A stretch of DNA of 64,000 nucleotides from assembly GCA_002269645.1 (NCBI GenBank), contig NIVC01002811.1, positions 170,578-234,577 on the forward strand. The letters run 5' to 3'. Below, piece after piece: positions 248 to 49,252 of the stretch. The DNA is from Macrostomum lignano (lineage: Eukaryota). Both the position numbers and the translations under genes were made by a program. Numbering within the stretch: the stretch's first letter is position 1; each line of letters opens with the position of its first letter. Below the pieces are notes generated by a model that saw only the letters and a list, made by a program, of their open reading frames with translations, was not told where the DNA came from and ran no database searches.

Positions 248-5558
<5,311 letters not shown>

Positions 5559-7421
5559 ATCTGTAGTTTTCAATTGACCGAAATCTCATATTGGAATCGA
5601 ATCTGAGCTGTAATTGTGAAGTTTTATTGCTTTATAAATCATACTTGCTTTCTTATATTGATTGGGCAGTACTGTAATGGTTTTATTAATAAGAATTGAA
5701 CCTTATAGTTTTTAAGCATTTCTGTTTTGGTGGTTGTGGATGTGATATTGAAAACTTATTCGATATGCACATGTACAAATCACAAATGTTCTAGAATGAC
5801 ATAAAGAACTTTCTGTCATTTACAGCTCACGCATTTTAGCTTTAGAACTAACTTCGTAGTAGGCTGGTATTTTCTACTTTTGAATTATTGTACTGAAAGT
5901 AGCGCGGAAGGAAAAGTCGATAATATCATTTTTCCTTCGTTCCTTCGTCGTCTGTTTTAATTCATTCATTTTGGCTAGCTGTTATATTCTGCACAAACGA
6001 CGCATTTGTGATGAATCAATAATAATGTCGTGCGAGTGTTTTACTATATTAATCGATCAATACCTACGCGGCATCAAATATAGAGATAAGGAAATGCAAT
6101 TCAGGCGTTTTTGTAAGGCACCAATTTATACCGCGCTTGGAAAATTGCGATCGTCTTCATGTGTTTTCTGTCGCACAGAGTCATATTTGTGAAAAAATTT
6201 TTATTAGGGATTTTGATCGATACAATTTATGTATGCGTAATCAAAATCATGAAGATGAAAGATTTCGGTCAAGAAACAGATTCAATAATTTTTTCTACAG
6301 GAGTATATTGCCATTGGGGTCAGGGACTTACGGGAAGCTGCTTTACATTTTGCCTAGAGACAGTGATTAAGGGCTGAAGTGTATGTCACATCTCAAATAC
6401 TGGCTACCAAAGTAATTATTTTTACAATTAAAGCCTAAATGATTAATAAACCCTATGTTATATATACCCAATTTGTTCGTGTCTATCTGGATATCGACGC
6501 GTTAACTCTATTTCGGTGCATAGAGTTCACGAGTCGTAAATCGTTTAATTCTGTTATAATTTTCGTACTCAGACGATTTCAAAGAGAATATTTTCAATGA
6601 AACGGATCATGGTCTTGTCAAGCAAAATTTTTGCAACAGTCAACAGTGTATATAACATCTTAAAATTCTCTTTTTAAATACAAAACCCTTTAAAATGCTA
6701 AGAAATTGAAAGAAGCGCCTTGGAACAGTCGGAAAAATATTTTCCATAACTATAATAAAAACTTTTCAATTCATCATTTTGTGTTCAAACTTAATGCTTT
6801 CCAATTTGGCTTTTAGCTTTGCTTTGAAATTTTTAGGCCTATAGCCAACTACTAGCCTCTGTAAAAAATTCTCCTTATTGTATACAATTACAGGCTATAG
6901 GTTTGCTATTGAATAAATAATTGAAGCTAAGAATTTATAATATAAAATTTAATTACTGAAATGTTGAGATATCTATTTTTGTTTGTTCTTAGATCCATCT
7001 TCTATAAATTTAGATGATAAGATGATAAATCTATAGTGTTTAAGTCTCTAATGTTCATTAATAATAAAAGCTTAAATGAGAGATGAATGAACTGATAGGC
7101 TCCTATTTAATTAAAATAAGTCAAAATACTAATTTGTAATTAAATTTATTTTCATACTTTGACTAAGCTTTGCCTTACCTACAGTGTCTCTAATATTAAG
7201 TTTCTAATATAAAATTATAATAATGTTTCCAATATAAAAGTTTATCTCAAAGTTATGTTGTACAAACAATGAGAATTTCTGTACCAAATAGCATATTTTT
7301 CTGATGAGCAATGTATTATAGTATAAAAGATGAACTGGTACCTGCCTAATAACAAAGATCCAATAATAGGTAAACTAACTCTGCCATTGCTCTTCTACAT
7401 CTGAAATTGGCTCAACTGCAG

Positions 7422-8930
7422 GCTCCATCTCTGCGCCTCTCCGCCAACCTCAGCTGGTTGTTCGCCGACCGGCCTGGCATTGTTGAGCGGCTGGGCCGCG
7501 CGGCGGCTCGCGGCTTTCGCTACGTGGAGGCGATGGACGCCGGCGGCGAGACCCCGGCCAGCCTAGCGGATGCCTGCCGGCGCGCTGGAGGACTTCAGTT
7601 CGCCCTTATCAATGCGCCGCCCTGCCGGCTGCCCAGCGGCGATCTTGGCTTAACGGCCCTTCCAGATAGGTGAAATGGAGTGGCAATTCTTAGCCTACCC
7701 CAACCCATCCTCCAATGTGCACACGCTCTCAGTCTGCCCCTAATAACTCCACCCATCCCCCAATGTACATACGCTCTCAGTCTGCCCCTAATAACTCCAC
7801 CCATCCCCCAATGTACATACGCTCTCAGTCTGCCCCTAATAACTCCACCCGTCTCCCAATGTACACACGCTCTCAGTCTGCCCCTAAGAATCCCACCCAT
7901 CCTCCAATGTACATACGCTCTCAGTCTGCCCCTAAGAATCCCACCCATCCCCCAATGTACATACGCTCTCAGTCTGCCCCTAAGAATCCCACCCATCCCC
8001 CAATGTACACACGCTCTCAGTCTGCCCCTAATAACTCCACCCATCCCCAAATGTACATACGCTCTCAGTCTGTCCCTAAGAATCCCACCCATCCCCCAAT
8101 GTACACACGCTCTCAGTCTGCCCCTAATAACTCCACCCATCCCCCAATGTACACACGCTCTCATTCTGCCCCTAAGAAGCCCACCCATCCCCCAATGTAC
8201 ACACGCTCTCAGTCTGCCCCTAATAACTCCACCCATCCCCCAATGTACATACGCTCTCAGTCTGCCCCTAATAACTCCACCCATCCCCCAATGTGCACAC
8301 GGCTACCAGCCTGCCACTACCAACCATAATATCTTAAATCAAAAGTTCGAAATGTACTATTGTAACCAAAATTCGAACTTTCCTTCCGGCAGACGCGAAG
8401 AATTCCGCGCTGGCCTGTCCGCCGCGGCCGACCTGTGCTCGGCTCTGTCCTGTCCGACACTTCACGTCATGTCCGGCCGCACGACCGTCCGGAGTCCGGA
8501 GGTCCGCGCCGCCTACGTAGACGGTCTGCGTGAAGCTGTCCAAATTTTTGCGCCTCTCGGCGTCACCTGCGTTATCGAGCCAATTAGCAACATAGCCGAT
8601 TATTACCTGAACTCGTACACCGATGCGGTGGCCATCATTAACGACGTGCCGGGCCTTCGCCTACTGCTGGACCTGTTCCACCTGCAGATGCTGGAGGGCT
8701 CGCTTGACTCGCTGCCAGCCTACCTGCCTCTGGCCGGTCACGTGCAAATCGCGCAGGCACCTGGTCGCCAAGAACCCGGAGCACCGGGCGATATCGACTA
8801 TGGCGCGGTGTTGCGTCAGATTGGTGAGGCCGGCTACTCGGGCTGCGTCGGACTGGAGTACCGACCGAGCGACGGTGCCGAGGCCGGCATCGACTGGCTG
8901 ATTGAGATGGGCTACCTGCAGCCTCATTAA
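7422..8930 (+). CDS. HYI: Hydroxypyruvate isomerase-like protein; exons 7422-7669 and 8393-8930; no genomic in-frame ATG (see findings)
   Basis: APSLRLSANLSWLF matches the HYI N-terminus. Downstream motifs are LINAPP, LHVMSGR, VIEPI, LDLFHLQ, HVQIAQAPGRQEPG and VGLEYRP. The intron 7670-8392 is GT/AG and phase 2 joins correctly. Confidence 0.92.
7700..8300. repeat. 57-bp minisatellite, HYI intron
   Basis: Tandem units; 19-aa periodicity in the ORF track. Confidence 0.95.
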
Positions 8931-9021
8931 TCGCCACCCGCTGCGGCCTCTTCAAAGTTTTCCAATTTTCAATAATTATGCCACCGATATGCTTTCGGAT
9001 AAGGAATTCTAATGTACTACA

Positions 9022-9442
9022 AAGCGGCACCTGGACTGGAAACAGGATTTTTAACTCGGGTAGCACCTGGACTGGAATCAGGATTTTCAACTTGGGTAGC
9101 ACCTGGACTGGAATCAGGATTTTTAACTTGGGTAGCACCTGGACTGGAAACAGGATTTTCAACTTGGGTAGCACCTGGACTGGAATCAGGATTTTTAACT
9201 TGGGTAGCACCTGGACTGGAAACAGGATTTTCAACTTGGGTAGCACCTGGACTGGAATCAGGATTTTTAACTTGGGTAGCACCTGGACTGGAAACAGGAT
9301 TTTTAACTTGGGTAGCACCTGGACTGGAAACAGGATTTTTAACTTGGGTAGCACCTGGACTGGAAAGAGGATTTTCAACTTAGGTAGCACCTGGACTGGA
9401 AAGAGGATTTTCAACTTGGGTAGCACCTGGACTGGAAACAGA
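9022..9442. repeat. 36-bp minisatellite downstream of the HYI stop
   Basis: Unit tagcacctggactggaatcaggattttcaacttggg. Confidence 0.95.
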
Positions 9443-9617
9443 AATTTTAGCATTTCTAAATAACTTTCTGATTGCAATTTTGATTATCCAAACATAAAAT
9501 TATTTTCAAAGCGCATCTAACTAATTCCTTTGTGGTCCAAACAATTCTATGCTGTTTGCATTCTTCATTCACCGCGAACTGTGCTGCTCCCATTGAGACC
9601 AAACTGGCCAACCTCAA

Positions 9618-19900: not shown

Positions 19901-21826
19901 TGGATTGAGATAATTCGAAAATCACCTGACGCTTAAGGCACACGTGCAGGAATGCGAGGGCTAATTCTAATTGTTAGTGTGCCGCAACAGTTGTTATAAT
20001 GTTTAGTAGGCCACAACACCAAACAGCCACATCACCAAACAGCCACATCACCAAACAGCCACATCACCAAACAGCCACATCACCAAACAGCCACATCACC
20101 AAACAGCCACCTCACCAAACAGCCACCTCACCAAACAGCCACACAATACAACACAGTTAGCACCATAAAAGCCTATTCTGTAGAAAAAGAAACGCACCAC
20201 CCATGTCCGAGCAGAGATTGACCAGCTCGTAGCTCCTCTCCTCAATGATGTGCCGCACGGTGAGCGTCTCCGGGTAGACCCGCAGCTGCACTATGGATCT
20301 GCGCACGAACAGCTGCACCCGGTGGCACTCTTTTGGCTCCGGCACCGTCATGTCCTGCGTGTCGTAAGTCTGGCAGCTGTTGGTGTTCAGCTTGTGGTGC
20401 TGCATCGACCGTGCCAAAGCCGACACCGGCATCTCGTCGCCGTGCTGTCGCTCGTACTCGTCAAGCATCTGAGCAATTTTTATCATCTGAATCTGAGCGT
20501 TGCGCACCTTGAATGAGTCTTCAGGCCAAGGGCACTGGGACAGGCTGTACGAGTACTTATTGTAGTTGCAGGAGTCGTAGCAGCTCTCCGGCTTCACTGC
20601 ATTCTCGGACACATTGTCGGCGCACATCATCCTGGTTAGGGGCACGTCCAGGCTGGGGTCCATCTGTCGCATTAGTAAGCCGATCTTGATGTAATCGCCC
20701 AGGCCTTGGGGTGGCCCCTCCAGGCTGTCCAGAGCCTTCCTGTAGAGTCGCTTCACAGCGGCAACTCGGCCTGGAGTCGTCACCCCGATCAAGTCGTGGC
20801 AAAAGCTCTCGGTGGTGCTGTTGAAGCCAGGTTTCAGGATCACGTGACTCTCGAGCAGACAGGTGCAGAGCTTGTAAACTTCCTGATGGTACTCGGCTTT
20901 GATGCAGTCGAACAGTTGACGCTCGTAGCTTCGAGTGAAGTTGAACTGATTGTCGAATAGCTCCAGCTGCACGTCCGGCACGCACGGATGCGTGGGCGTG
21001 TTGGCCAGAGAGGTTTTCACCTGCTCGAGGCCGACAGCGGTCAGCGTACCGGTGGGCGCCATGATTCCGTACTCTAACGGGTGCGGGATGGTGTCCCGCT
21101 GGTGAATCTGGAACCGAATGCCGTTATTTTCTAGTCCGGAAGCAAGCCTGGCCAGGCTGTCCAGCTTGAAGCTGGGGTCAGCCGAGGGCACGTAGAGCAG
21201 CAGGAAGAGGCCCCGGTCCATGCCGCTGCTGCGGAGGTGCCTTGCCGGCGGCTTGAATGTGAAGCAGTTGGTGTACAGTCGGTGGTAGAACACCCGGAAG
21301 TTGTGATGACTGCAGGGCTCGCCGTCGAATGTGCAGTAGAGCACCATGTCCATCGGCCGGATGTTTACGTTGGTGATGTTGAGCAGGTGCTCCCAGGTGG
21401 TATAGATCATTTCGATTGCTTTGCGTTCCTTCCGCCAGTCGTTCTCGGTGCCGAAGTGGCTGTACACCAGGCTATAGGTGATCACCCGTTCGTCCACTCT
21501 GTCGGCTTTTTTGCCAGTTCTGCGCTGCTGTTGTGAAAGAATCGCTTATTGAGCGGGTCGCAGAAGGTCAGGTCTGGAAACTCGAACGAGTTCGGCTCCT
21601 GCCGGTTGGTGCTGCTCACTGGATACTGCAGGTAGGTCGTCACCTGTTTTGTCGCGTGAATGATGGCACCAAGCAGGGCGCACGACACAATGCCGATCCA
21701 GACCATGCGCACCCAGTTCTGGCCGGAGTTGATCCTGCTGAATCCGTGTGCCGTTGTACCGCTGGTGAAGTTGTGTACGTAGCCGCGAAGCATCGCTCGA
21801 CGACTGCGCTGCAAGTCTGACGTCAT
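16926..21826 (-). CDS. DEG/ENaC family cation channel, about 645 aa; exons 21826-20201 (one-base frame break at 21507-21512) and 17236-16926
   Basis: ATG at 21826, pre-TM1 TTAHG motif, TM1, FPDLTFCD, a Cys-rich ectodomain, and TM2 SDMGGVLGLWIGFS with a GxS filter. The two ORF-track frames join only if one A is added in an A6 run or the ribosome slips -1. Confidence 0.9.
18648..18975. mobile_element. MITE family B, about 100-bp TIRs, 8-bp TSD GTATAGCG, inside the DEG/ENaC intron
   Basis: The ends catggatgaataa and ttattcatccttg are inverted. GTATAGCG occurs at 18640-18647 and 18976-18983. Confidence 0.9.
20015..20145. repeat. 16-bp minisatellite (accaaacagccacatc), DEG/ENaC intron
   Basis: Direct tandem units. 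Confidence 0.92.
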
Positions 21827-36190: not shown

Positions 36191-39100
36191 GTTCGCACAG
36201 CAGCGTCAGCGCCCTGGCTGAGGCGCGAAGTCCGCCGGCCCGACCTGGCGGCAGGCGGCGCAGCGGCAGCCTGGGCAGCAGGTGGCGCAGCAGGCGGCCC
36301 AGCCGGTTCCGCTCTTCGGCGGAGCCCAGGCAGATCAGCCAGGTGGTGGGAGGGCGCAGCCGCAGGGTCAGATAAGTGGGGTAGTGCGGATCGAAGCCAA
36401 TACTGCGGATCTCGTCTAAAGTGACTAGATCGACCGTTTCTACCTGGAAGTTTAGAATGAGAAACAGCTCAACTGCAGCTATAGAATGCTCAGATTGCAG
36501 CTCAACTGCAGCTATAGAATGCTCAGATTGCAGCTCAACTGCAGCTATAGAATGCTCAGATTGCAGCTCAACTACAGCTATAGAATGCTCAGATTGCAGC
36601 TCAACTGCAGCTATAGAATGCTCAGATTGCAGCTCAACTGCAGCTATAGAATGCTCAGATTGCAGCTCAACTACAGCTATAGAATGCTCAGATTGCAGCT
36701 CAACTGCAGCTATAGAATGCTCAGATTGCAGCTCAACTACAGCTATAGAATGCTCAGATTGCAGCTCAACTACAGCTATAGAATGCTCAGATTGCAGCTC
36801 AACTACTACAGCTATAGAATGCTCAGATTGCAGCTCAACTACTACAGCTATAGAATGCTCAGATTGCAGCTCAACTACTACAGCTATAGAATGCTCAGAT
36901 TGCAGCTCAACTACAACTATAGAATGCTCAGATTGCAGCTCAACTACAACTATAGAATGCTCAGATTGCAGCTCAACTACAGCTATAGAATGCTCAGATT
37001 GCAGCTCAACTACTACAGCTATAGAATGCTCAGATTGCAGCTCAACTACTACAGCTATAGAATGCTCAGATTGCAGCTCAACTACAACTATAGAATGCTC
37101 AGATTGCAGCTCAACTACTACAGCTATAGAATGCTCAGATTGCAGCTCAACTACAACTATAGAATGCTCAGATTGCAGCTCAACTACAACTATAGAATGC
37201 TCAGATTGCAGCTCAACTACAGCTTTAGAAAGCCACTATAATACGTACAGCTCAAATGCTACTTCACAGGAGCCCCAGATCCCGCCCAAGAGCTGCACTC
37301 ACCGTCCAGACACCGGGCACCTCGGCGCCCAGAGCGAGGCCATGCTCAGTAACCAACAGCGTCAGAATCTTTGAAGTGGCGCCGCTGCCGCTGCCGCCAG
37401 CGCCGCCGCGCACCAGAGCGGTGCAAATTGCCTGTTTCCAAGTGACAGCGCTCTGGCCGCCGATCATGACGGTGTCACCGCCGGCCAGCGTCACCTCCAC
37501 TACGGTGCCATTGTCGGCGTCCTGAACCAGGCAGCATCCCCGACAGCCGGCCAGCGACCACTGCGGCCCGCCGTCGCCCGGAGCGGCCAGCAGCCAGCCG
37601 CCGGAGAGCAGCAGTCGTCGGCGACTCCAATCGCCGCGCGGCGGCCGCACAGGCAGCCGGGCATCGAGCAGCACCTCGTGCGTAGTTAGCGCGTAGTGCA
37701 TCGGCGCGCCAGACAAATTGGGCGCCTCGGCGCGCAGCCATTTGCCCAGGCCGACATCTTGGCAGGGCGAGCCGCGGAACAGCGGCACAGTTGGCAGGCA
37801 GCGGCGCAAGTCGCGGGTCGCCGATTCGCCGATCGACTGGTCGACGCAGGCGACAAAATGGCGGGCGGAGCGGACCACGCCGACCAGGTGAAGCAGGTGG
37901 CCCTGGCCGCTCTGGCACACGTGATCGAGCGAATCCGGCCGCCATTCGCACAGCCTGCGTTAATGCGGATGGAATTCTACTACTTTTAGTAGAGTATGCG
38001 AGTTATCCGTGATCTACTGCTGTAATATTTAGAGTAATACTGCCACGTCAACCCTCCGGAATCCCCCGCTGCCAGACCCTCAACCCTCCGGAATTCCCCG
38101 CTGCCAGGCCCTCAACCCTCCGGAATCCCCCGCTGCCAGGCCCTCAACCCTCCGGAATCCTCCGCTGCCAGGCCCTGAACCCTCCGGAATCCTCCGCTGC
38201 CAGGCCCTCAACCCTCCGGAATCCCCCGCTGCCAGGTCCTCAACCCTCCGGAATCCTCCGCTGCCAGGCCCTCAACCCTCCGGAATCCTCCGCTGCCAGG
38301 CCCTGAACCCTCCGGAATCCTCCGCTGCCAGGCCCTCAACCCTCCGGAATCCCCCGCTGCCAGGTCCTCAACCCTCCGGAATCCTCCGCTGCCAGGCCCT
38401 CAACCCTCCGGAATCCTCCGCTGCCACCACCTCCTTGAAATCCTACAGTCCCAAATGTACTACAAGTTGATTACACGGTAAAACTGTTAACAATCAACAA
38501 TGAAAACAAAGGTGACAGAAGCAGACTCCGCACCTGGACAGAGAACCGGAAGACACCAGTCTAACCCGGCCAGGCGACAGGCACAGCAGGCAGGCCGCCC
38601 AGGCGTCGCCTCGCCACCACAGAGCTCTATAAGCTGCGCTGAGTGTCGCATCGCCCAACGTGTCCTGAACCTGACGCAACGGCAACGCGTAGTCGCTAGA
38701 GAGAGCCGCCGGTTCAAAAGGATTTGGCGCATCTGATGTCACTGAATCGTCCGACAAAGATTCATCAGTGTCAGTGTCAGCATCCGTTTTAGCTTTGGCA
38801 CTGGCTGCATCCGCATCCGCATCCGCATCCGCAATCGCATTTACATCCGTATAGGCATTCGCTTCATCTGAATATGTGTACATATCAGCATCCGCATCTG
38901 CATCCGCATCAGCATCCGCATCAGCATCCGCATCAGCATCCGCATCCTCATCAGCTCGCAAAGCCGCTTCGGCCTCTTGTAGTTCGTCGGCCAGCGACCT
39001 GGCCAAACTGGCGGGCTGCTGCTGGCCGGACCGCAAGAGTTGGTTGCCCGACGCCGCCGCCGCCGACATGGACAACGGCATCGACATTGGCAGCGGAAGA

Positions 39101-40582
39101 GACGGTCGAGGATGTCGCTGCTGTTGTTGCCGATTTCTGGACGATCGAACATCGCCATTCAGTTTGACAGGCTCAGCAGCAGGGGGCGCAGGTTGGCTGT
39201 CAGGTTGGCTGTCAGGTAAGCTGTCAGGTTCATCGCCATCGAGCCGCTGCAGCTGGTTGTGATTGTCGGCTAGCAGGCCAGCGGCAACGGGAAAACAGTC
39301 GGCATCGTCGTCGGAGTCCGCCAGCGCCAGCCGATAATAGTTGGATGACGAGCCACCGTTGACTGCCTGCTGCTGTTTCTGGCGATGCGTCAGCTTGCGC
39401 TCAACAACCAGACTGTCTTCCTGCGACATCGCGATACTGTTGAAATCGGACGACAGGTCCTGCTGCTGCGGCGGCTCGTCTGGCTGCTCGTCAGTCGGAG
39501 GCATTGTTGACGAAGATCTAGACGACGACGGCGGCTGTTGATCCTGAGAGGAGCCAGTTGACGACGCCTGCGGATGGCTGTTGGCCTCGGCTGGGTCAGG
39601 CAGAGCGGAGAGTGAGCCAGACGAGCTGGACTCGGTGTCGCCGCGGTGCCGATCGCGCCGGGCCGGGTCCTGACAGCCGACGTCCAAGAAGGTGACGGTG
39701 GCCCAGGACACGCAGGACAGGTCGCAGTGCTCCAGGCCGGCCAGCAGGGTCTGCAATAGGCGGGTTCTGTTGGCATTGGCCAGCAGGGCGTGCGGCTCGT
39801 AGAATTTGCGTAGCAGGGGGACATCGCCGGCAAGGCTGGCCAGATAGGACTCGAGTAGAGACTCGCTGAGAGCCCGGAACAGCCAGGCGCGAGCTCTGCC
39901 GTGATTGGTTAGGAGGTACCTGGGCAAAGATAAGGGATTGAACGGGTACACTGCTGAGGCATGAGCCTGACTGTGCATACGTGCAAACTGAGGAATATAA
40001 GCGTAGAATGGATATTACAAGCTGTGAGGTGTGTACATTGTGTGTGTACATTGGGGGGTAGAGAGGTGTGGCTGTAGGGCGGAAGATTGTGTGTACATTG
40101 AGGGGTAGAGAAGTGTGGGCGAGGGCGGAAGATTGTGTGTACATTGAGGGGTAGAGAGGTGTGGGCGAGGGCGGAAAATTGTGTGTACATTGAGGGGTAG
40201 AGAGGTGTGGGCCAGGGCGGAAAATTGTGTGTACATTGAGGGGTAGAGAGGTGTGGGTGAGGGCGGAAAATTGTGTGTACATTGAGTGGTAGAGAGGTGT
40301 GGCCTCAATGCAGGAGAATATTGGAAGGCAAAGGGCTTTAAGCTAGAGTTACCTGCTGGCTTTAATCTCCCGAATAACATCTTTATGGCTGAGCTCCACA
40401 AGCAGGTCCCAGTAGCCGCGCGACGGTGTCCTTAGGCCGTCAAGAAATACTCGATCTAGACAGTGACAGACTTTTTGCACGCAGGGATTGTCGCTGGTTA
40501 GAGCGATGCTCTCGGTGCAGATGCACTGGATCTCTTTGAGGGCGACGCTAAGCCGCTGCAAATGAGCGTCCTTGATGGACAT
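36177..40582 (-). CDS. PLEKHM2: PLEKHM2/SKIP-like RUN and PH domain lysosomal adaptor, about 844 aa; exons 40582-40353, 39919-38534, 37954-37303, 36443-36177
   Basis: The N-terminal RUN domain (CHCLDRVFLDGL...GYWDLL...TNHGRARAWLFRALSESLLESYL) parallels SKIP. It is followed by an acidic low-complexity linker and a C-terminal PH-like region (TWLICLGSAEERNRL). Phases are consistent (2535 nt). Confidence 0.85.
36465..37225. repeat. 33-36-bp minisatellite, PLEKHM2 intron 3
   Basis: Unit cagctcaactgcagctatagaatgctcagattg. Confidence 0.96.
38050..38425. repeat. 32-bp minisatellite, PLEKHM2 intron 2
   Basis: Unit ccctcaaccctccggaatcctccgctgccagg. Confidence 0.95.
40030..40300. repeat. 46-bp minisatellite, PLEKHM2 intron 1
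   Basis: gtgtacattg recurs every 46 bp. Confidence 0.92.
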
Positions 40583-43025: not shown

Positions 43026-48687
<5,662 letters not shown>

Positions 48688-48751
48688 CTGCAATGCATGT
48701 TTGAACGGCACTCTTGAGGGGGAATGAAATCTTCTAGCTGCATAACATAAG

Positions 48752-49252
48752 CAAGGACTGAAAATGTTAAGGAGGCCAGGCCAGGTTTTACCGAAAAATA
48801 CTTTACGGAGATGGGGAATTTTCAGTTTTTTTCTGGACAAAACTTGCTACTGCTTTTGATAGGCGCGGCCTGACCCAATAATCATCTTTTGGTACGTTTT
48901 GCTTGTAAATTAGGATTCTATGATAATTTTATATCCTACGTGTATGTCCTATTTAAAATGAAAAATAAAAATGACACAGCTCGACTCATTCTGTTACAAA
49001 GTTTGTTACACAGTCAGCTAAGAATAACAAAACAGATTCATAAAACCAATGAGCCGAGCCGTGCCTTATGAATATCAATAGAGCTATAAGAAAGGCACAA
49101 CATAAAGATAAACACTGGATGTGCCTCCTATCGAAAGCAATAACAATGTAATATGAAAAAAGTAAAAGCTTCCTATCTCCGTTGTGTATTTTTTCGGCGA
49201 AAACCAGCCTCCTAAACATTTTCTAAGAAACGTAGTCTCCCGTCCTTCTAGT
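48752..49252. mobile_element. Degenerate, internally deleted MITE family A copy just upstream of the NTE acceptor
   Basis: The left end is caaggact. Internal ttaggattctatg and gattcataaaaccaa are shared with the intact copy. The right arm reads aaggcacaacat...tcctatctccg...ttctaagaaacg...cccgtccttcta. Confidence 0.75.

What the first reader, a model, noticed from the sequence alone, without database searches (positions are those of the whole stretch)
7371..7470. HYI has no genomic start codon; a spliced-leader AUG would restore it exactly
Seen: between an in-frame TAA (7371) and the conserved N-terminus there is no in-frame ATG. Instead there is a branch-point-like ACTAAC (7374-7379), a pyrimidine-rich tract, and a first downstream AG at 7420-7421, followed in phase 0 by GCT CCA TCT CTG CGC. 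Known: flatworm spliced leaders end in AUG, and this AUG has been shown to initiate translation in schistosomes; human HYI begins MAPLRFSANLSWLF. Inference: trans-splicing gives MAPSLRLSANLSWLF, the orthologous N-terminus at the right length, so the gene would depend on the SL for its initiator Met.
Basis: partly seen in the sequence, partly recalled or inferred. Interest (0 to 1): 0.82.

Follow-up and report, generated by a model that had tools for sequence, protein, structure and literature searches.

The report
Spliced-leader start codon for HYI gene
A hydroxypyruvate-isomerase gene of the flatworm Macrostomum lignano has no start codon of its own and most likely borrows the AUG at the end of the trans-spliced leader RNA, a mechanism known in flatworms since 2006, so this is a clean but ordinary example.

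Summary
There is an in-frame TAA at 7371-7373 and no in-frame ATG after it. The only AG between 7374 and 7440 is at 7420-7421, and the exon then opens GCT CCA TCT CTG CGC (APSLR). The window is Macrostomum lignano, assembly Mlig_3_7, contig NIVC01002811.1.

The gene has two exons (7422-7669 and 8393-8930) and encodes 261 genomic codons of a PF01261 hydroxypyruvate isomerase.

The published M. lignano spliced leader (SL) ends in ATG. The acceptor CTGCAG matches the published trans-splice motif [T/C]TNCAG. SL-AUG plus exon 1 places Met 8 residues before the conserved ANLS motif. All but a handful of 64 homologues start just upstream of that motif, most often 5 residues before it.

All three genomic copies lack a genomic ATG. 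Four of five UniProt models start exactly at Ala-7422, and GenBank flags the CDS as 5'-partial.

I could reach no RNA read showing the junction, so trans-splicing at this site remains an inference. One public model instead cis-splices the upstream KCNQ1-like gene's last exon, in frame, to the same acceptor. The ACTAAC "branch point" is not kept in one copy.

SL-AUG initiation is established in schistosomes and has been noted for Macrostomum.

The parts
7371..7373 (+). In-frame TAA that closes the HYI reading frame 51 nt upstream of exon 1
   Evidence: The same TAA is present in copies L002 and L003.
7374..7421 (+). 3' end of the outron. It holds ACTAAC (7374-7379), a pyrimidine-rich stretch (7380-7402) and the acceptor CTGCAG (7416-7421).
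   Evidence: The acceptor matches the published M. lignano trans-splice motif [T/C]TNCAG. ACTAAC is not conserved in L002.
7422..7669 (+). HYI exon 1 (248 nt, 69% G+C). It begins in phase 0 with GCT (Ala) and has no ATG before codon 38.
   Evidence: UniProt models A0A1I8H9T6, A0A1I8HG90, A0A1I8FT49 and A0A1I8FU30 start at this residue.
7533..7535 (+). First in-frame genomic ATG (Met38). Starting here would remove the conserved N-terminal segment, including the ANLS motif.
7670..8392 (+). Intron 1 (GTGAAA...GGCAG) carrying a 48-nt x 12.5 tandem array at 7703-8301
8393..8930 (+). HYI exon 2, ending with stop TAA at 8928-8930
5478..5483 (+). Weak donor GTGAAC inside the last exon of the upstream KCNQ1-like gene. 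UniProt model A0A1I8JS92 uses it to cis-splice, in frame, onto 7422.
   Evidence: It is conserved in all three copies.
5556..5558 (+). Stop codon of the upstream KCNQ1-like gene, 1,863 nt before the HYI acceptor

Best explanation
The locus is gene Mlig001525.g1 of Macrostomum lignano, a two-exon hydroxypyruvate isomerase (HYI). The primary transcript is cut at the acceptor CTGCAG|G (7421|7422), and the 35-nt spliced leader is trans-spliced onto it. The leader's last three bases, AUG, land in phase 0 directly before GCU CCA UCU. The mature mRNA therefore reads ...UUGC AUG GCU CCA UCU CUG CGC and encodes a 262-residue protein, MAPSLRLSANLSWLF...

The initiator Met is thus encoded by the SL RNA gene and not by the HYI locus. 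Without trans-splicing, no full-length enzyme can be made.

Shown here: the sequence anatomy, the organism, the gene model, the fit of the N-terminus to homologues, and the absence of an ATG in all three copies.
Taken from the literature: the SL sequence, the acceptor motif, and the use of the SL AUG as initiator in flatworms.
Inferred: that this particular acceptor receives the SL, and that ribosomes start at the SL AUG on this mRNA.
For: 1. Identity of the locus. The window matches GCA_002269645.1 contig NIVC01002811.1 exactly. The spliced protein is 100% identical to PAA55101.1 over that model's length and 98% identical to A0A1I8H9T6, 'putative hydroxypyruvate isomerase, M. lignano'. It hits PF01261 at E = 4e-33.
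2. The spliced leader. The M. lignano SL ends in ATG, and 30-39% of the species' genes are trans-spliced.
3. The acceptor. CTGCAG equals the top trans-splice acceptor motif [T/C]TNCAG.
4. The closed frame. The frame is closed by TAA 51 nt upstream, and the next in-frame ATG is codon 38.
5. The N-terminal fit. With the SL Met, the start lies 8 residues before the conserved ANLS motif, the same as in shark HYI. Across 64 homologues the Met most often lies 5 residues before the motif, and only a handful fall outside 4-17. The solved relatives 1k77 and 3ngf align from query residue 6, at chain residues 3 and 11.
6. The three copies. L001 (identical to the window), L002 and L003 all keep the acceptor, the TAA and the lack of an ATG. 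All three keep 261 intact codons. CDS divergence is 0.8-1.1%. Upstream divergence is about 5.5% for the window's copy against the other two, though only about 1% between L002 and L003.
7. Public models. Four of five UniProt models start exactly at the exon boundary rather than extending back to the TAA. This is what transcript alignments look like when the 5' part does not map to the genome. GenBank marks all three CDS as 5'-partial with no upstream exon.
8. No alternative exon. No ATG...|GT[AG]AG phase-0 mini-exon exists in the 1,863 nt back to the upstream gene.
9. Upstream ATGs. An unprocessed 5' region would carry 11 upstream ATGs within 400 nt.
10. Precedent. The SL AUG serves as initiator in S. 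mansoni, where 28% of trans-spliced mRNAs have it in frame and more than 40 cDNAs need it. All reported flatworm SLs end in ATG.
Against: - No RNA-seq read, cDNA or 5'-RACE sequence carrying the SL-7422 junction could be reached. Held supplements list neither the gene nor HYI. The protein collection holds no 'MAPSLRL...' product. A junction scan of metagenome contigs was empty, as expected.
- UniProt A0A1I8JS92 joins the same acceptor in cis, in frame, to the KCNQ1-like last exon. The acceptor is therefore not exclusively a trans-splice site.
- GenBank CDS starts lie 30-33 nt inside the exon rather than at 7422, which I cannot explain.
- The three copies are recent duplicates, so their agreement says little about long-term constraint.
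- The motif match is weak evidence on its own. By my rough estimate, about 15% of CAG sites would fit by chance.
Confidence: 0.78

Rival explanations
1. Cis-splicing supplies the start. The KCNQ1-like gene and HYI are transcribed together. The weak donor ACG|GTGAAC (5477|5478) in the channel's last exon is spliced to 7422. HYI is then translated as the C-terminal part of a channel-HYI fusion that starts at the channel's own ATG.
For: UniProt A0A1I8JS92 (P0072) has exactly this join. Its residues 15-91 map at 100% to the KCNQ-like last exon, and residues 90-352 map to HYI exons 1 and 2. The join is in frame. The donor is conserved in all three copies. The model starts mid-exon in a shifted frame, which looks transcript-derived rather than ab initio. 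Parasitic flatworms share acceptors between cis- and trans-splicing.
Against: - It is one model out of eight. It comes from the older, indel-rich assembly, has frameshifts at both ends and carries no Met of its own.
- The RNA-seq-guided GenBank annotation keeps the channel gene, which ends at its own stop, separate from HYI in L002 and L003.
- The donor misses the conserved G at position +5 of the GT[G/A]AG motif.
- Of 64 HYI homologues, only three carry more than 21 residues ahead of the ANLS motif (at most 44), and none carries a channel-sized N-terminal extension.
- About 7% of assembled M. lignano transcripts are unprocessed precursors, which would explain such a model.
Confidence: 0.07
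2. An unannotated small 5' exon of HYI itself supplies the ATG by ordinary cis-splicing. The best candidate is the ORF MKDFGQ...CLET (6255-6362), followed by GTGATT in phase 0.
For: That ORF and its GTGATT are present in all three copies, with one in-frame 6-nt indel. In all, 29 ATG...|GT phase-0 combinations exist in the intergenic region.
Against: - None of the candidates has the species' GT[G/A]AG donor.
- The other candidates differ between copies.
- The region is 26% G+C, against 63-69% in the real exons.
- A 36-38-residue extension matches no homologue.
- Neither public annotation has such an exon.
Confidence: 0.05
3. No SL Met is used. Translation starts either at the genomic Met38 (7533) or at a non-AUG codon in the unspliced leader (CTG 7398, TTG 7407 or CTG 7416).
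For: These codons exist in frame. Non-AUG starts occur in other SL-using taxa.
Against: - A Met38 start removes the N-terminal segment that aligns from residue 3 of the solved relative 1k77, along with the ANLS motif found in nearly all homologues.
- An unspliced leader carries 11 upstream ATGs in 400 nt, including in-frame ones that run into the TAA.
- On a trans-spliced mRNA, the SL AUG is the first AUG and is in frame.
Confidence: 0.05
4. The gene is a decaying or untranslated copy, so its lack of a start codon has no functional meaning.
For: M. lignano is a hidden polyploid with many redundant copies. GenBank labels the CDS partial.
Against: All three copies keep 261 uninterrupted codons and both splice sites. 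CDS mismatch is 0.8-1.1%. Upstream mismatch is about 5.5% plus many indels for the window's copy against the other two, though only about 1% between L002 and L003. Synonymous changes are at least as frequent as non-synonymous ones.
Confidence: 0.03

Closest known systems
Schistosoma mansoni mRNAs that use the SL 3'-terminal AUG as initiator Met (Cheng, Cohen, Ndegwa & Davis, J Biol Chem 2006; summarised in PMC9851317, PMC5832876 and PMC12582326)
   Same: In both cases a flatworm SL ending in AUG is joined in phase 0 to an ORF that has no genomic start codon. The resulting protein has the orthologous N-terminus.
   Different: The species and lineage differ: this is a free-living macrostomorph, not a parasitic trematode. 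Here the junction and the initiation are inferred from DNA and public gene models. In S. mansoni they were shown with cDNAs and translation assays.
slORFs: reading frames created by SL addition (slORFfinder, PMC9851317)
   Same: The start codon is supplied by the leader, so the ORF cannot be seen in the genome alone.
   Different: That work used ribosome footprints in nematodes, Oikopleura and trypanosomes, mostly with near-cognate NUG codons. Here the codon is a true AUG, and no footprint data were available.
SL trans-spliced genes and operons of M. lignano (Wudarski 2017, PMC5730564; Ustyantsev & Berezikov 2021, PMC8629364)
   Same: The species, the SL and the acceptor motif [T/C]TNCAG are the same. 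The gene is conserved and has a human homologue, which is the class enriched among trans-spliced genes.
   Different: Those papers do not analyse the use of the SL AUG as a start codon. The raw distance to the upstream same-strand gene is 1,863 nt, above their 1-kb repeat-adjusted operon threshold, so operon membership is unsettled.
Hydroxypyruvate isomerase / OtnI-type xylose-isomerase-like TIM barrels (PF01261; E. coli YgbM 1k77; vertebrate HYI)
   Same: The match is full length: 38-42% identity to shark and other HYI over 97% of the query, and E = 3e-34 to 1k77. The motif ANLSWLF is shared with vertebrate HYI.
   Different: Enzyme activity was not tested. All listed full-length homologues carry their own start codon, and the M. 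lignano gene does not.

Membership tests
Flatworm mRNAs initiated at the spliced-leader AUG | The species' SL ends in AUG at its 3' terminus | tested here: met
   The organism was identified as M. lignano. The published SL, CGGTCTCTTACTGCGAAGACTCAATTTATTGCATG, ends in ATG. The final ATG is noted as a translation start codon in Macrostomum.
Flatworm mRNAs initiated at the spliced-leader AUG | The SL AUG falls in frame with the conserved ORF, with no stop between | tested here: met
   Exon 1 begins in phase 0 at 7422. AUG plus GCT CCA ... gives MAPSLRLSANLS....
Flatworm mRNAs initiated at the spliced-leader AUG | No genomic in-frame ATG can give the orthologous N-terminus | tested here: met
   There is a TAA 51 nt upstream, the first ATG is at codon 38, and the same holds in all three copies. 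The N-terminal alignment of 64 homologues supports the SL-Met start position.
Flatworm mRNAs initiated at the spliced-leader AUG | RNA evidence that the SL is joined at this acceptor | not testable with these tools
   No transcript or read collection of M. lignano could be reached. Indirect support only: public models begin exactly at 7422, and the acceptor matches the trans-splice motif.
Flatworm mRNAs initiated at the spliced-leader AUG | Translation actually initiates at the SL AUG | not testable with these tools
   This needs ribosome profiling, N-terminal proteomics or a reporter assay.
Hydroxypyruvate isomerase (PF01261 TIM barrel, HYI/OtnI type) | Full-length sequence match to the family above curated thresholds | tested here: met
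   Pfam PF01261 scores 115.5 bits against a cut-off of 31.1. Homologues named HYI cover 94-97% of the query. PDB 1k77 and 3ngf match at E = 3e-34 and 5e-33.
Hydroxypyruvate isomerase (PF01261 TIM barrel, HYI/OtnI type) | Catalytic activity on hydroxypyruvate or a related keto-sugar acid | not testable with these tools
   This needs an enzyme assay.
M. lignano operon (downstream, SL-resolved gene) | A same-strand upstream gene within 1 kb after subtracting repeats (criterion of PMC8629364) | tested here: inconclusive
   The KCNQ1-like gene lies on the same strand, and its stop is 1,863 nt upstream. Its poly(A) site is unknown. Only one 47-nt tandem repeat was found in the gap, and the gap has no other copy in the window. 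The fused model A0A1I8JS92 hints at co-transcription.

The most novel reading that the evidence does not exclude
The acceptor at 7421|7422 may be a genuine dual-use site. It would mostly receive the SL, giving free HYI started at the SL Met. In a regulated fraction of read-through transcripts it would instead be cis-spliced, in frame, to the KCNQ1-like gene's last exon. That would produce a potassium channel whose C-terminal tail is replaced by a hydroxypyruvate-isomerase domain, and this arrangement is conserved in all three genomic copies.
Probability: 0.06. Interest if true: 0.45.

Novelty: new member of a known kind. Interest (0 to 1): 0.17.

Why it matters
The case explains why every public model of this gene is 'partial' or lacks a Met. 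The missing codon lies in the SL RNA gene, not in an assembly gap. In M. lignano 30-39% of genes are trans-spliced, so the same correction (prepend the SL AUG when it is in phase and no genomic ATG precedes the conserved N-terminus) probably applies to many gene models. It also matters when designing transgenes from trans-spliced genes. Biologically, it extends SL-AUG-dependent coding from parasitic flatworms to an early-branching free-living flatworm, which fits the view that the terminal AUG is an ancestral and functional feature of flatworm spliced leaders. It opens no new question.

Tried and rejected
- **Gene-level trans-splicing evidence in supplements.** I searched the held supplementary files of Wudarski 2017, Grudniewska 2018, Grudniewska 2016 and Ustyantsev 2021. 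Nothing was held or listed for Mlig001525, Mlig031072 or HYI.
- **Wasik et al. 2015.** This paper describes the source annotation of the UniProt models. It is not held.
- **Look-up of the SL-Met protein in public assemblies.** The 5.8-billion-protein search found no 'MAPSLRL...' product and no HYI from any other flatworm.
- **Junction scan of metagenome contigs** with TTTATTGCATG|GCTCCATCTCTGCGCC. There were no hits, which was expected and is uninformative.
- **SL RNA gene in the window or loci.** None was found.
- **Cis mini-exon search.** No candidate has a consensus donor. Only one weak candidate is conserved across copies.
- **ACTAAC as a conserved branch point.** Rejected, because L002 has ATAAAC plus a 24-nt insertion that adds another AG at -42.
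- **Pseudogene reading.** Rejected on intact ORFs and low CDS divergence.
- **Repeat-adjusted operon distance.** No repeats worth subtracting were found in the gap, so the operon question stays open.
Full report
**What is in the sequence.** Reading 6400-9400 and re-deriving the codons confirms every coordinate in the finding.
- TAA at 7371-7373 is in frame with the exon.
- ACTAAC lies at 7374-7379.
- The only AG between 7374 and 7440 is at 7420-7421.
- The exon then reads GCT CCA TCT CTG CGC CTC TCC GCC AAC CTC AGC TGG TTG TTC, which is APSLRLSANLSWLF.
- No ATG occurs in the 16 codons between the TAA and 7422. The next in-frame ATG is at 7533.
- The pyrimidine tract is real for 7380-7402 (78% pyrimidine) but not for the 17 nt next to the CAG (47%).
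- G+C rises from 26% in the 500 nt upstream to 69% in exon 1.

**Gene model.** Exon 1 is 7422-7669 and its donor is GTGAAA. The intron is 7670-8392 and carries a 48-nt tandem array. Exon 2 is 8393-8930 and ends in TAA. Together they give 786 nt, or 261 codons. The protein hits Pfam PF01261 at E = 4e-33. It matches the solved structures 1k77 (E. coli YgbM) and 3ngf at E = 3e-34 and 5e-33, aligned from query residue 6 to chain residues 3 and 11.

**Whose genome it is.** The protein search returned 'putative hydroxypyruvate isomerase, Macrostomum lignano' at 98% identity. The next best hits are 37-42% identical (sharks and unnamed contigs). GenBank protein PAA55101.1 (BOX15_Mlig001525g1) is identical over its length. 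Its contig, NIVC01002811.1 of assembly GCA_002269645.1 (Mlig_3_7), contains a 2-kb stretch of the window exactly. [quoted passage not shown]

**The spliced leader.** M. lignano has a single 35-nt SL, CGGTCTCTTACTGCGAAGACTCAATTTATTGCATG. Between 30% and 39% of its genes are trans-spliced, and conserved genes with human homologues are enriched among them. The top motif at trans-splice acceptors is [T/C]TNCAG, and the site here is CTGCAG at 7416-7421. Joining the SL to 7422 gives ...TTGC ATG GCT CCA TCT..., in phase 0.

**Does the product make sense?** I aligned the SL-Met protein with 64 homologues. The start Met most often lies 5 residues before the conserved ANLS motif, and only a handful of sequences fall outside 4-17. 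The SL-Met protein has 8 residues there, as do four shark HYI proteins (MLCSLRFA and MSCPLHFA). The naked mole-rat protein has 7 (MAPLRFS). Starting at the genomic Met38 would remove this motif and the segment that aligns from residue 3 of 1k77. A transcript with an unprocessed leader would carry 11 upstream ATGs in 400 nt.

**Other copies.** M. lignano is a hidden polyploid, and two further copies were fetched: L002 (NIVC01003031.1) and L003 (NIVC01001051.1).
- All three copies have the same acceptor, an in-frame TAA upstream, no in-frame ATG and the first ATG at codon 38.
- All three keep 261 codons.
- CDS mismatch is 0.8-1.1%. Upstream mismatch is about 5.5% plus many indels for the window's copy against the other two, though only about 1% between L002 and L003. 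Synonymous changes are at least as common as non-synonymous ones.
- The gene is therefore under constraint, but the copies are young, so their agreement is shallow evidence.
- L002 has ATAAAC instead of ACTAAC, and a 24-nt insertion that adds an AG at -42. The branch-point reading therefore should not be relied on.

**What public annotations say.** Four UniProt models from the earlier assembly start exactly at Ala-7422, without a Met. They do not extend back to the TAA, as an open 5'-partial ORF on an unspliced transcript would. This is the pattern expected when the transcript's 5' end does not align to the genome. The GenBank CDS of all three copies are flagged partial, have no upstream exon and start 30-33 nt inside exon 1. 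I cannot explain that offset.

**The cis-spliced model.** A fifth UniProt model, A0A1I8JS92, joins part of the last exon of the upstream gene to 7422. The donor is ACG|GTGAAC at 5477|5478. It is in frame and conserved in all three copies. The upstream gene is a KCNQ1-like potassium channel. Its pore exon matches KCNQ1 structures at E = 3e-26, and its stop at 5556-5558 lies 1,863 nt before the HYI acceptor. The fused model has no Met, begins mid-exon in a shifted frame and ends with a frameshift. About 7% of assembled M. lignano transcripts are precursor RNAs. I read the model as a read-through or precursor artefact or a minor isoform. It may indicate co-transcription of the two genes, but it is the main rival and could not be excluded.

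**Search for another source of the ATG.** Between the channel's stop and 7421 there are 29 ATG...|GT phase-0 combinations. None has the species' GT[G/A]AG donor, and five have GT[AG]A. Only one, the ORF at 6255-6362 followed by GTGATT, is kept in all three copies. It lies in 26% G+C sequence and would add 36-38 residues that no homologue has.

**What could not be done.** No read or cDNA with the SL-7422 junction was reachable.
- The supplements held for the four relevant papers do not list the gene, and the paper behind the UniProt models is not held.
- The protein collection has no 'MAPSLRL...' product and no HYI from another flatworm.
- A junction scan of metagenome contigs was empty.
- Trans-splicing at this site and initiation at the SL AUG therefore remain inferences. 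I rate them at about 0.78.

**Comparison with what is known.** Use of the SL 3'-terminal AUG as the initiator Met was shown in S. mansoni in 2006. There the AUG is in frame in 28% of trans-spliced mRNAs, and more than 40 cDNAs depend on it. All reported flatworm SLs end in ATG. The Macrostomum genome paper of 2023 labels the SL's final ATG a translation start codon. None of the 11 held papers that mention SL trans-splicing together with M. lignano came up as a study of SL-AUG-dependent genes. The dedicated 2021 study mentions AUG once, in a general remark. HYI is therefore a new, clean member of a known class. The mechanism is the known one, and the only addition is the species and the gene.

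**Verdict.** Novelty is low, and so is interest. The practical value lies in annotation: prepend the SL Met to 5'-partial models when the acceptor is in phase.

Noticed in passing
window 7703-8301; L002 and L003 introns: The HYI intron carries a 48-nt x 12.5 tandem array. Intron length in the three genomic copies is 723, 675 and 771 nt, which are steps of exactly one repeat unit.
   Followed up: partly
window 9027-9449: A 36-nt x 11.8 tandem array begins about 100 nt after the HYI stop codon, probably in or just beyond the 3' UTR.
   Followed up: no
window 598-5558 (+): The upstream gene is a KCNQ1-like potassium channel (pore exon E = 3e-26 to KCNQ1 structures). Large arrays that appear to lie in its introns sit at 981-1543 (23 nt), 1777-2823 (13 nt x 80) and 3225-3974 (24 nt x 31).
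   Followed up: partly
window 7452-7455; L001-L003 position 10001: The GenBank CDS of the three HYI copies are 5'-partial and start 33, 30 and 33 nt downstream of the acceptor rather than at it. This may be a by-product of how transcript 5' ends were set in the Mlig_3_7 annotation, but it is unexplained.
   Followed up: partly
window 5477|5478 to 7422: UniProt A0A1I8JS92 models an in-frame cis-splice from the KCNQ1-like last exon to the HYI acceptor. The donor is conserved in all three copies. This may be a sign of co-transcription or of shared cis/trans use of the acceptor.
   Followed up: partly
L002 9896-9970: The outron of copy L002 has a 24-nt insertion that creates an extra AG 42 nt before the acceptor. 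It also changes ACTAAC to ATAAAC. If that AG received the SL, the AUG would be out of frame.
   Followed up: partly
window 6255-6362: A short ORF (MKDFGQ...CLET), followed by GTGATT in phase 0 with exon 1, is retained in all three copies with a 6-nt in-frame indel. It is probably chance in 91%-identical DNA.
   Followed up: partly
window 20157-21497, 38494-39978, 44265-48840 (all minus strand): The downstream genes are convergent with HYI. They are an amiloride-sensitive sodium channel (ASC), a RUN-domain protein and a neuropathy-target-esterase/patatin-like gene with cNMP-binding domains.
   Followed up: no
L003 11522-11524: Copy L003 uses TGA as its stop codon where the window and L002 use TAA, and its last residues read HPH rather than QPH.
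   Followed up: no
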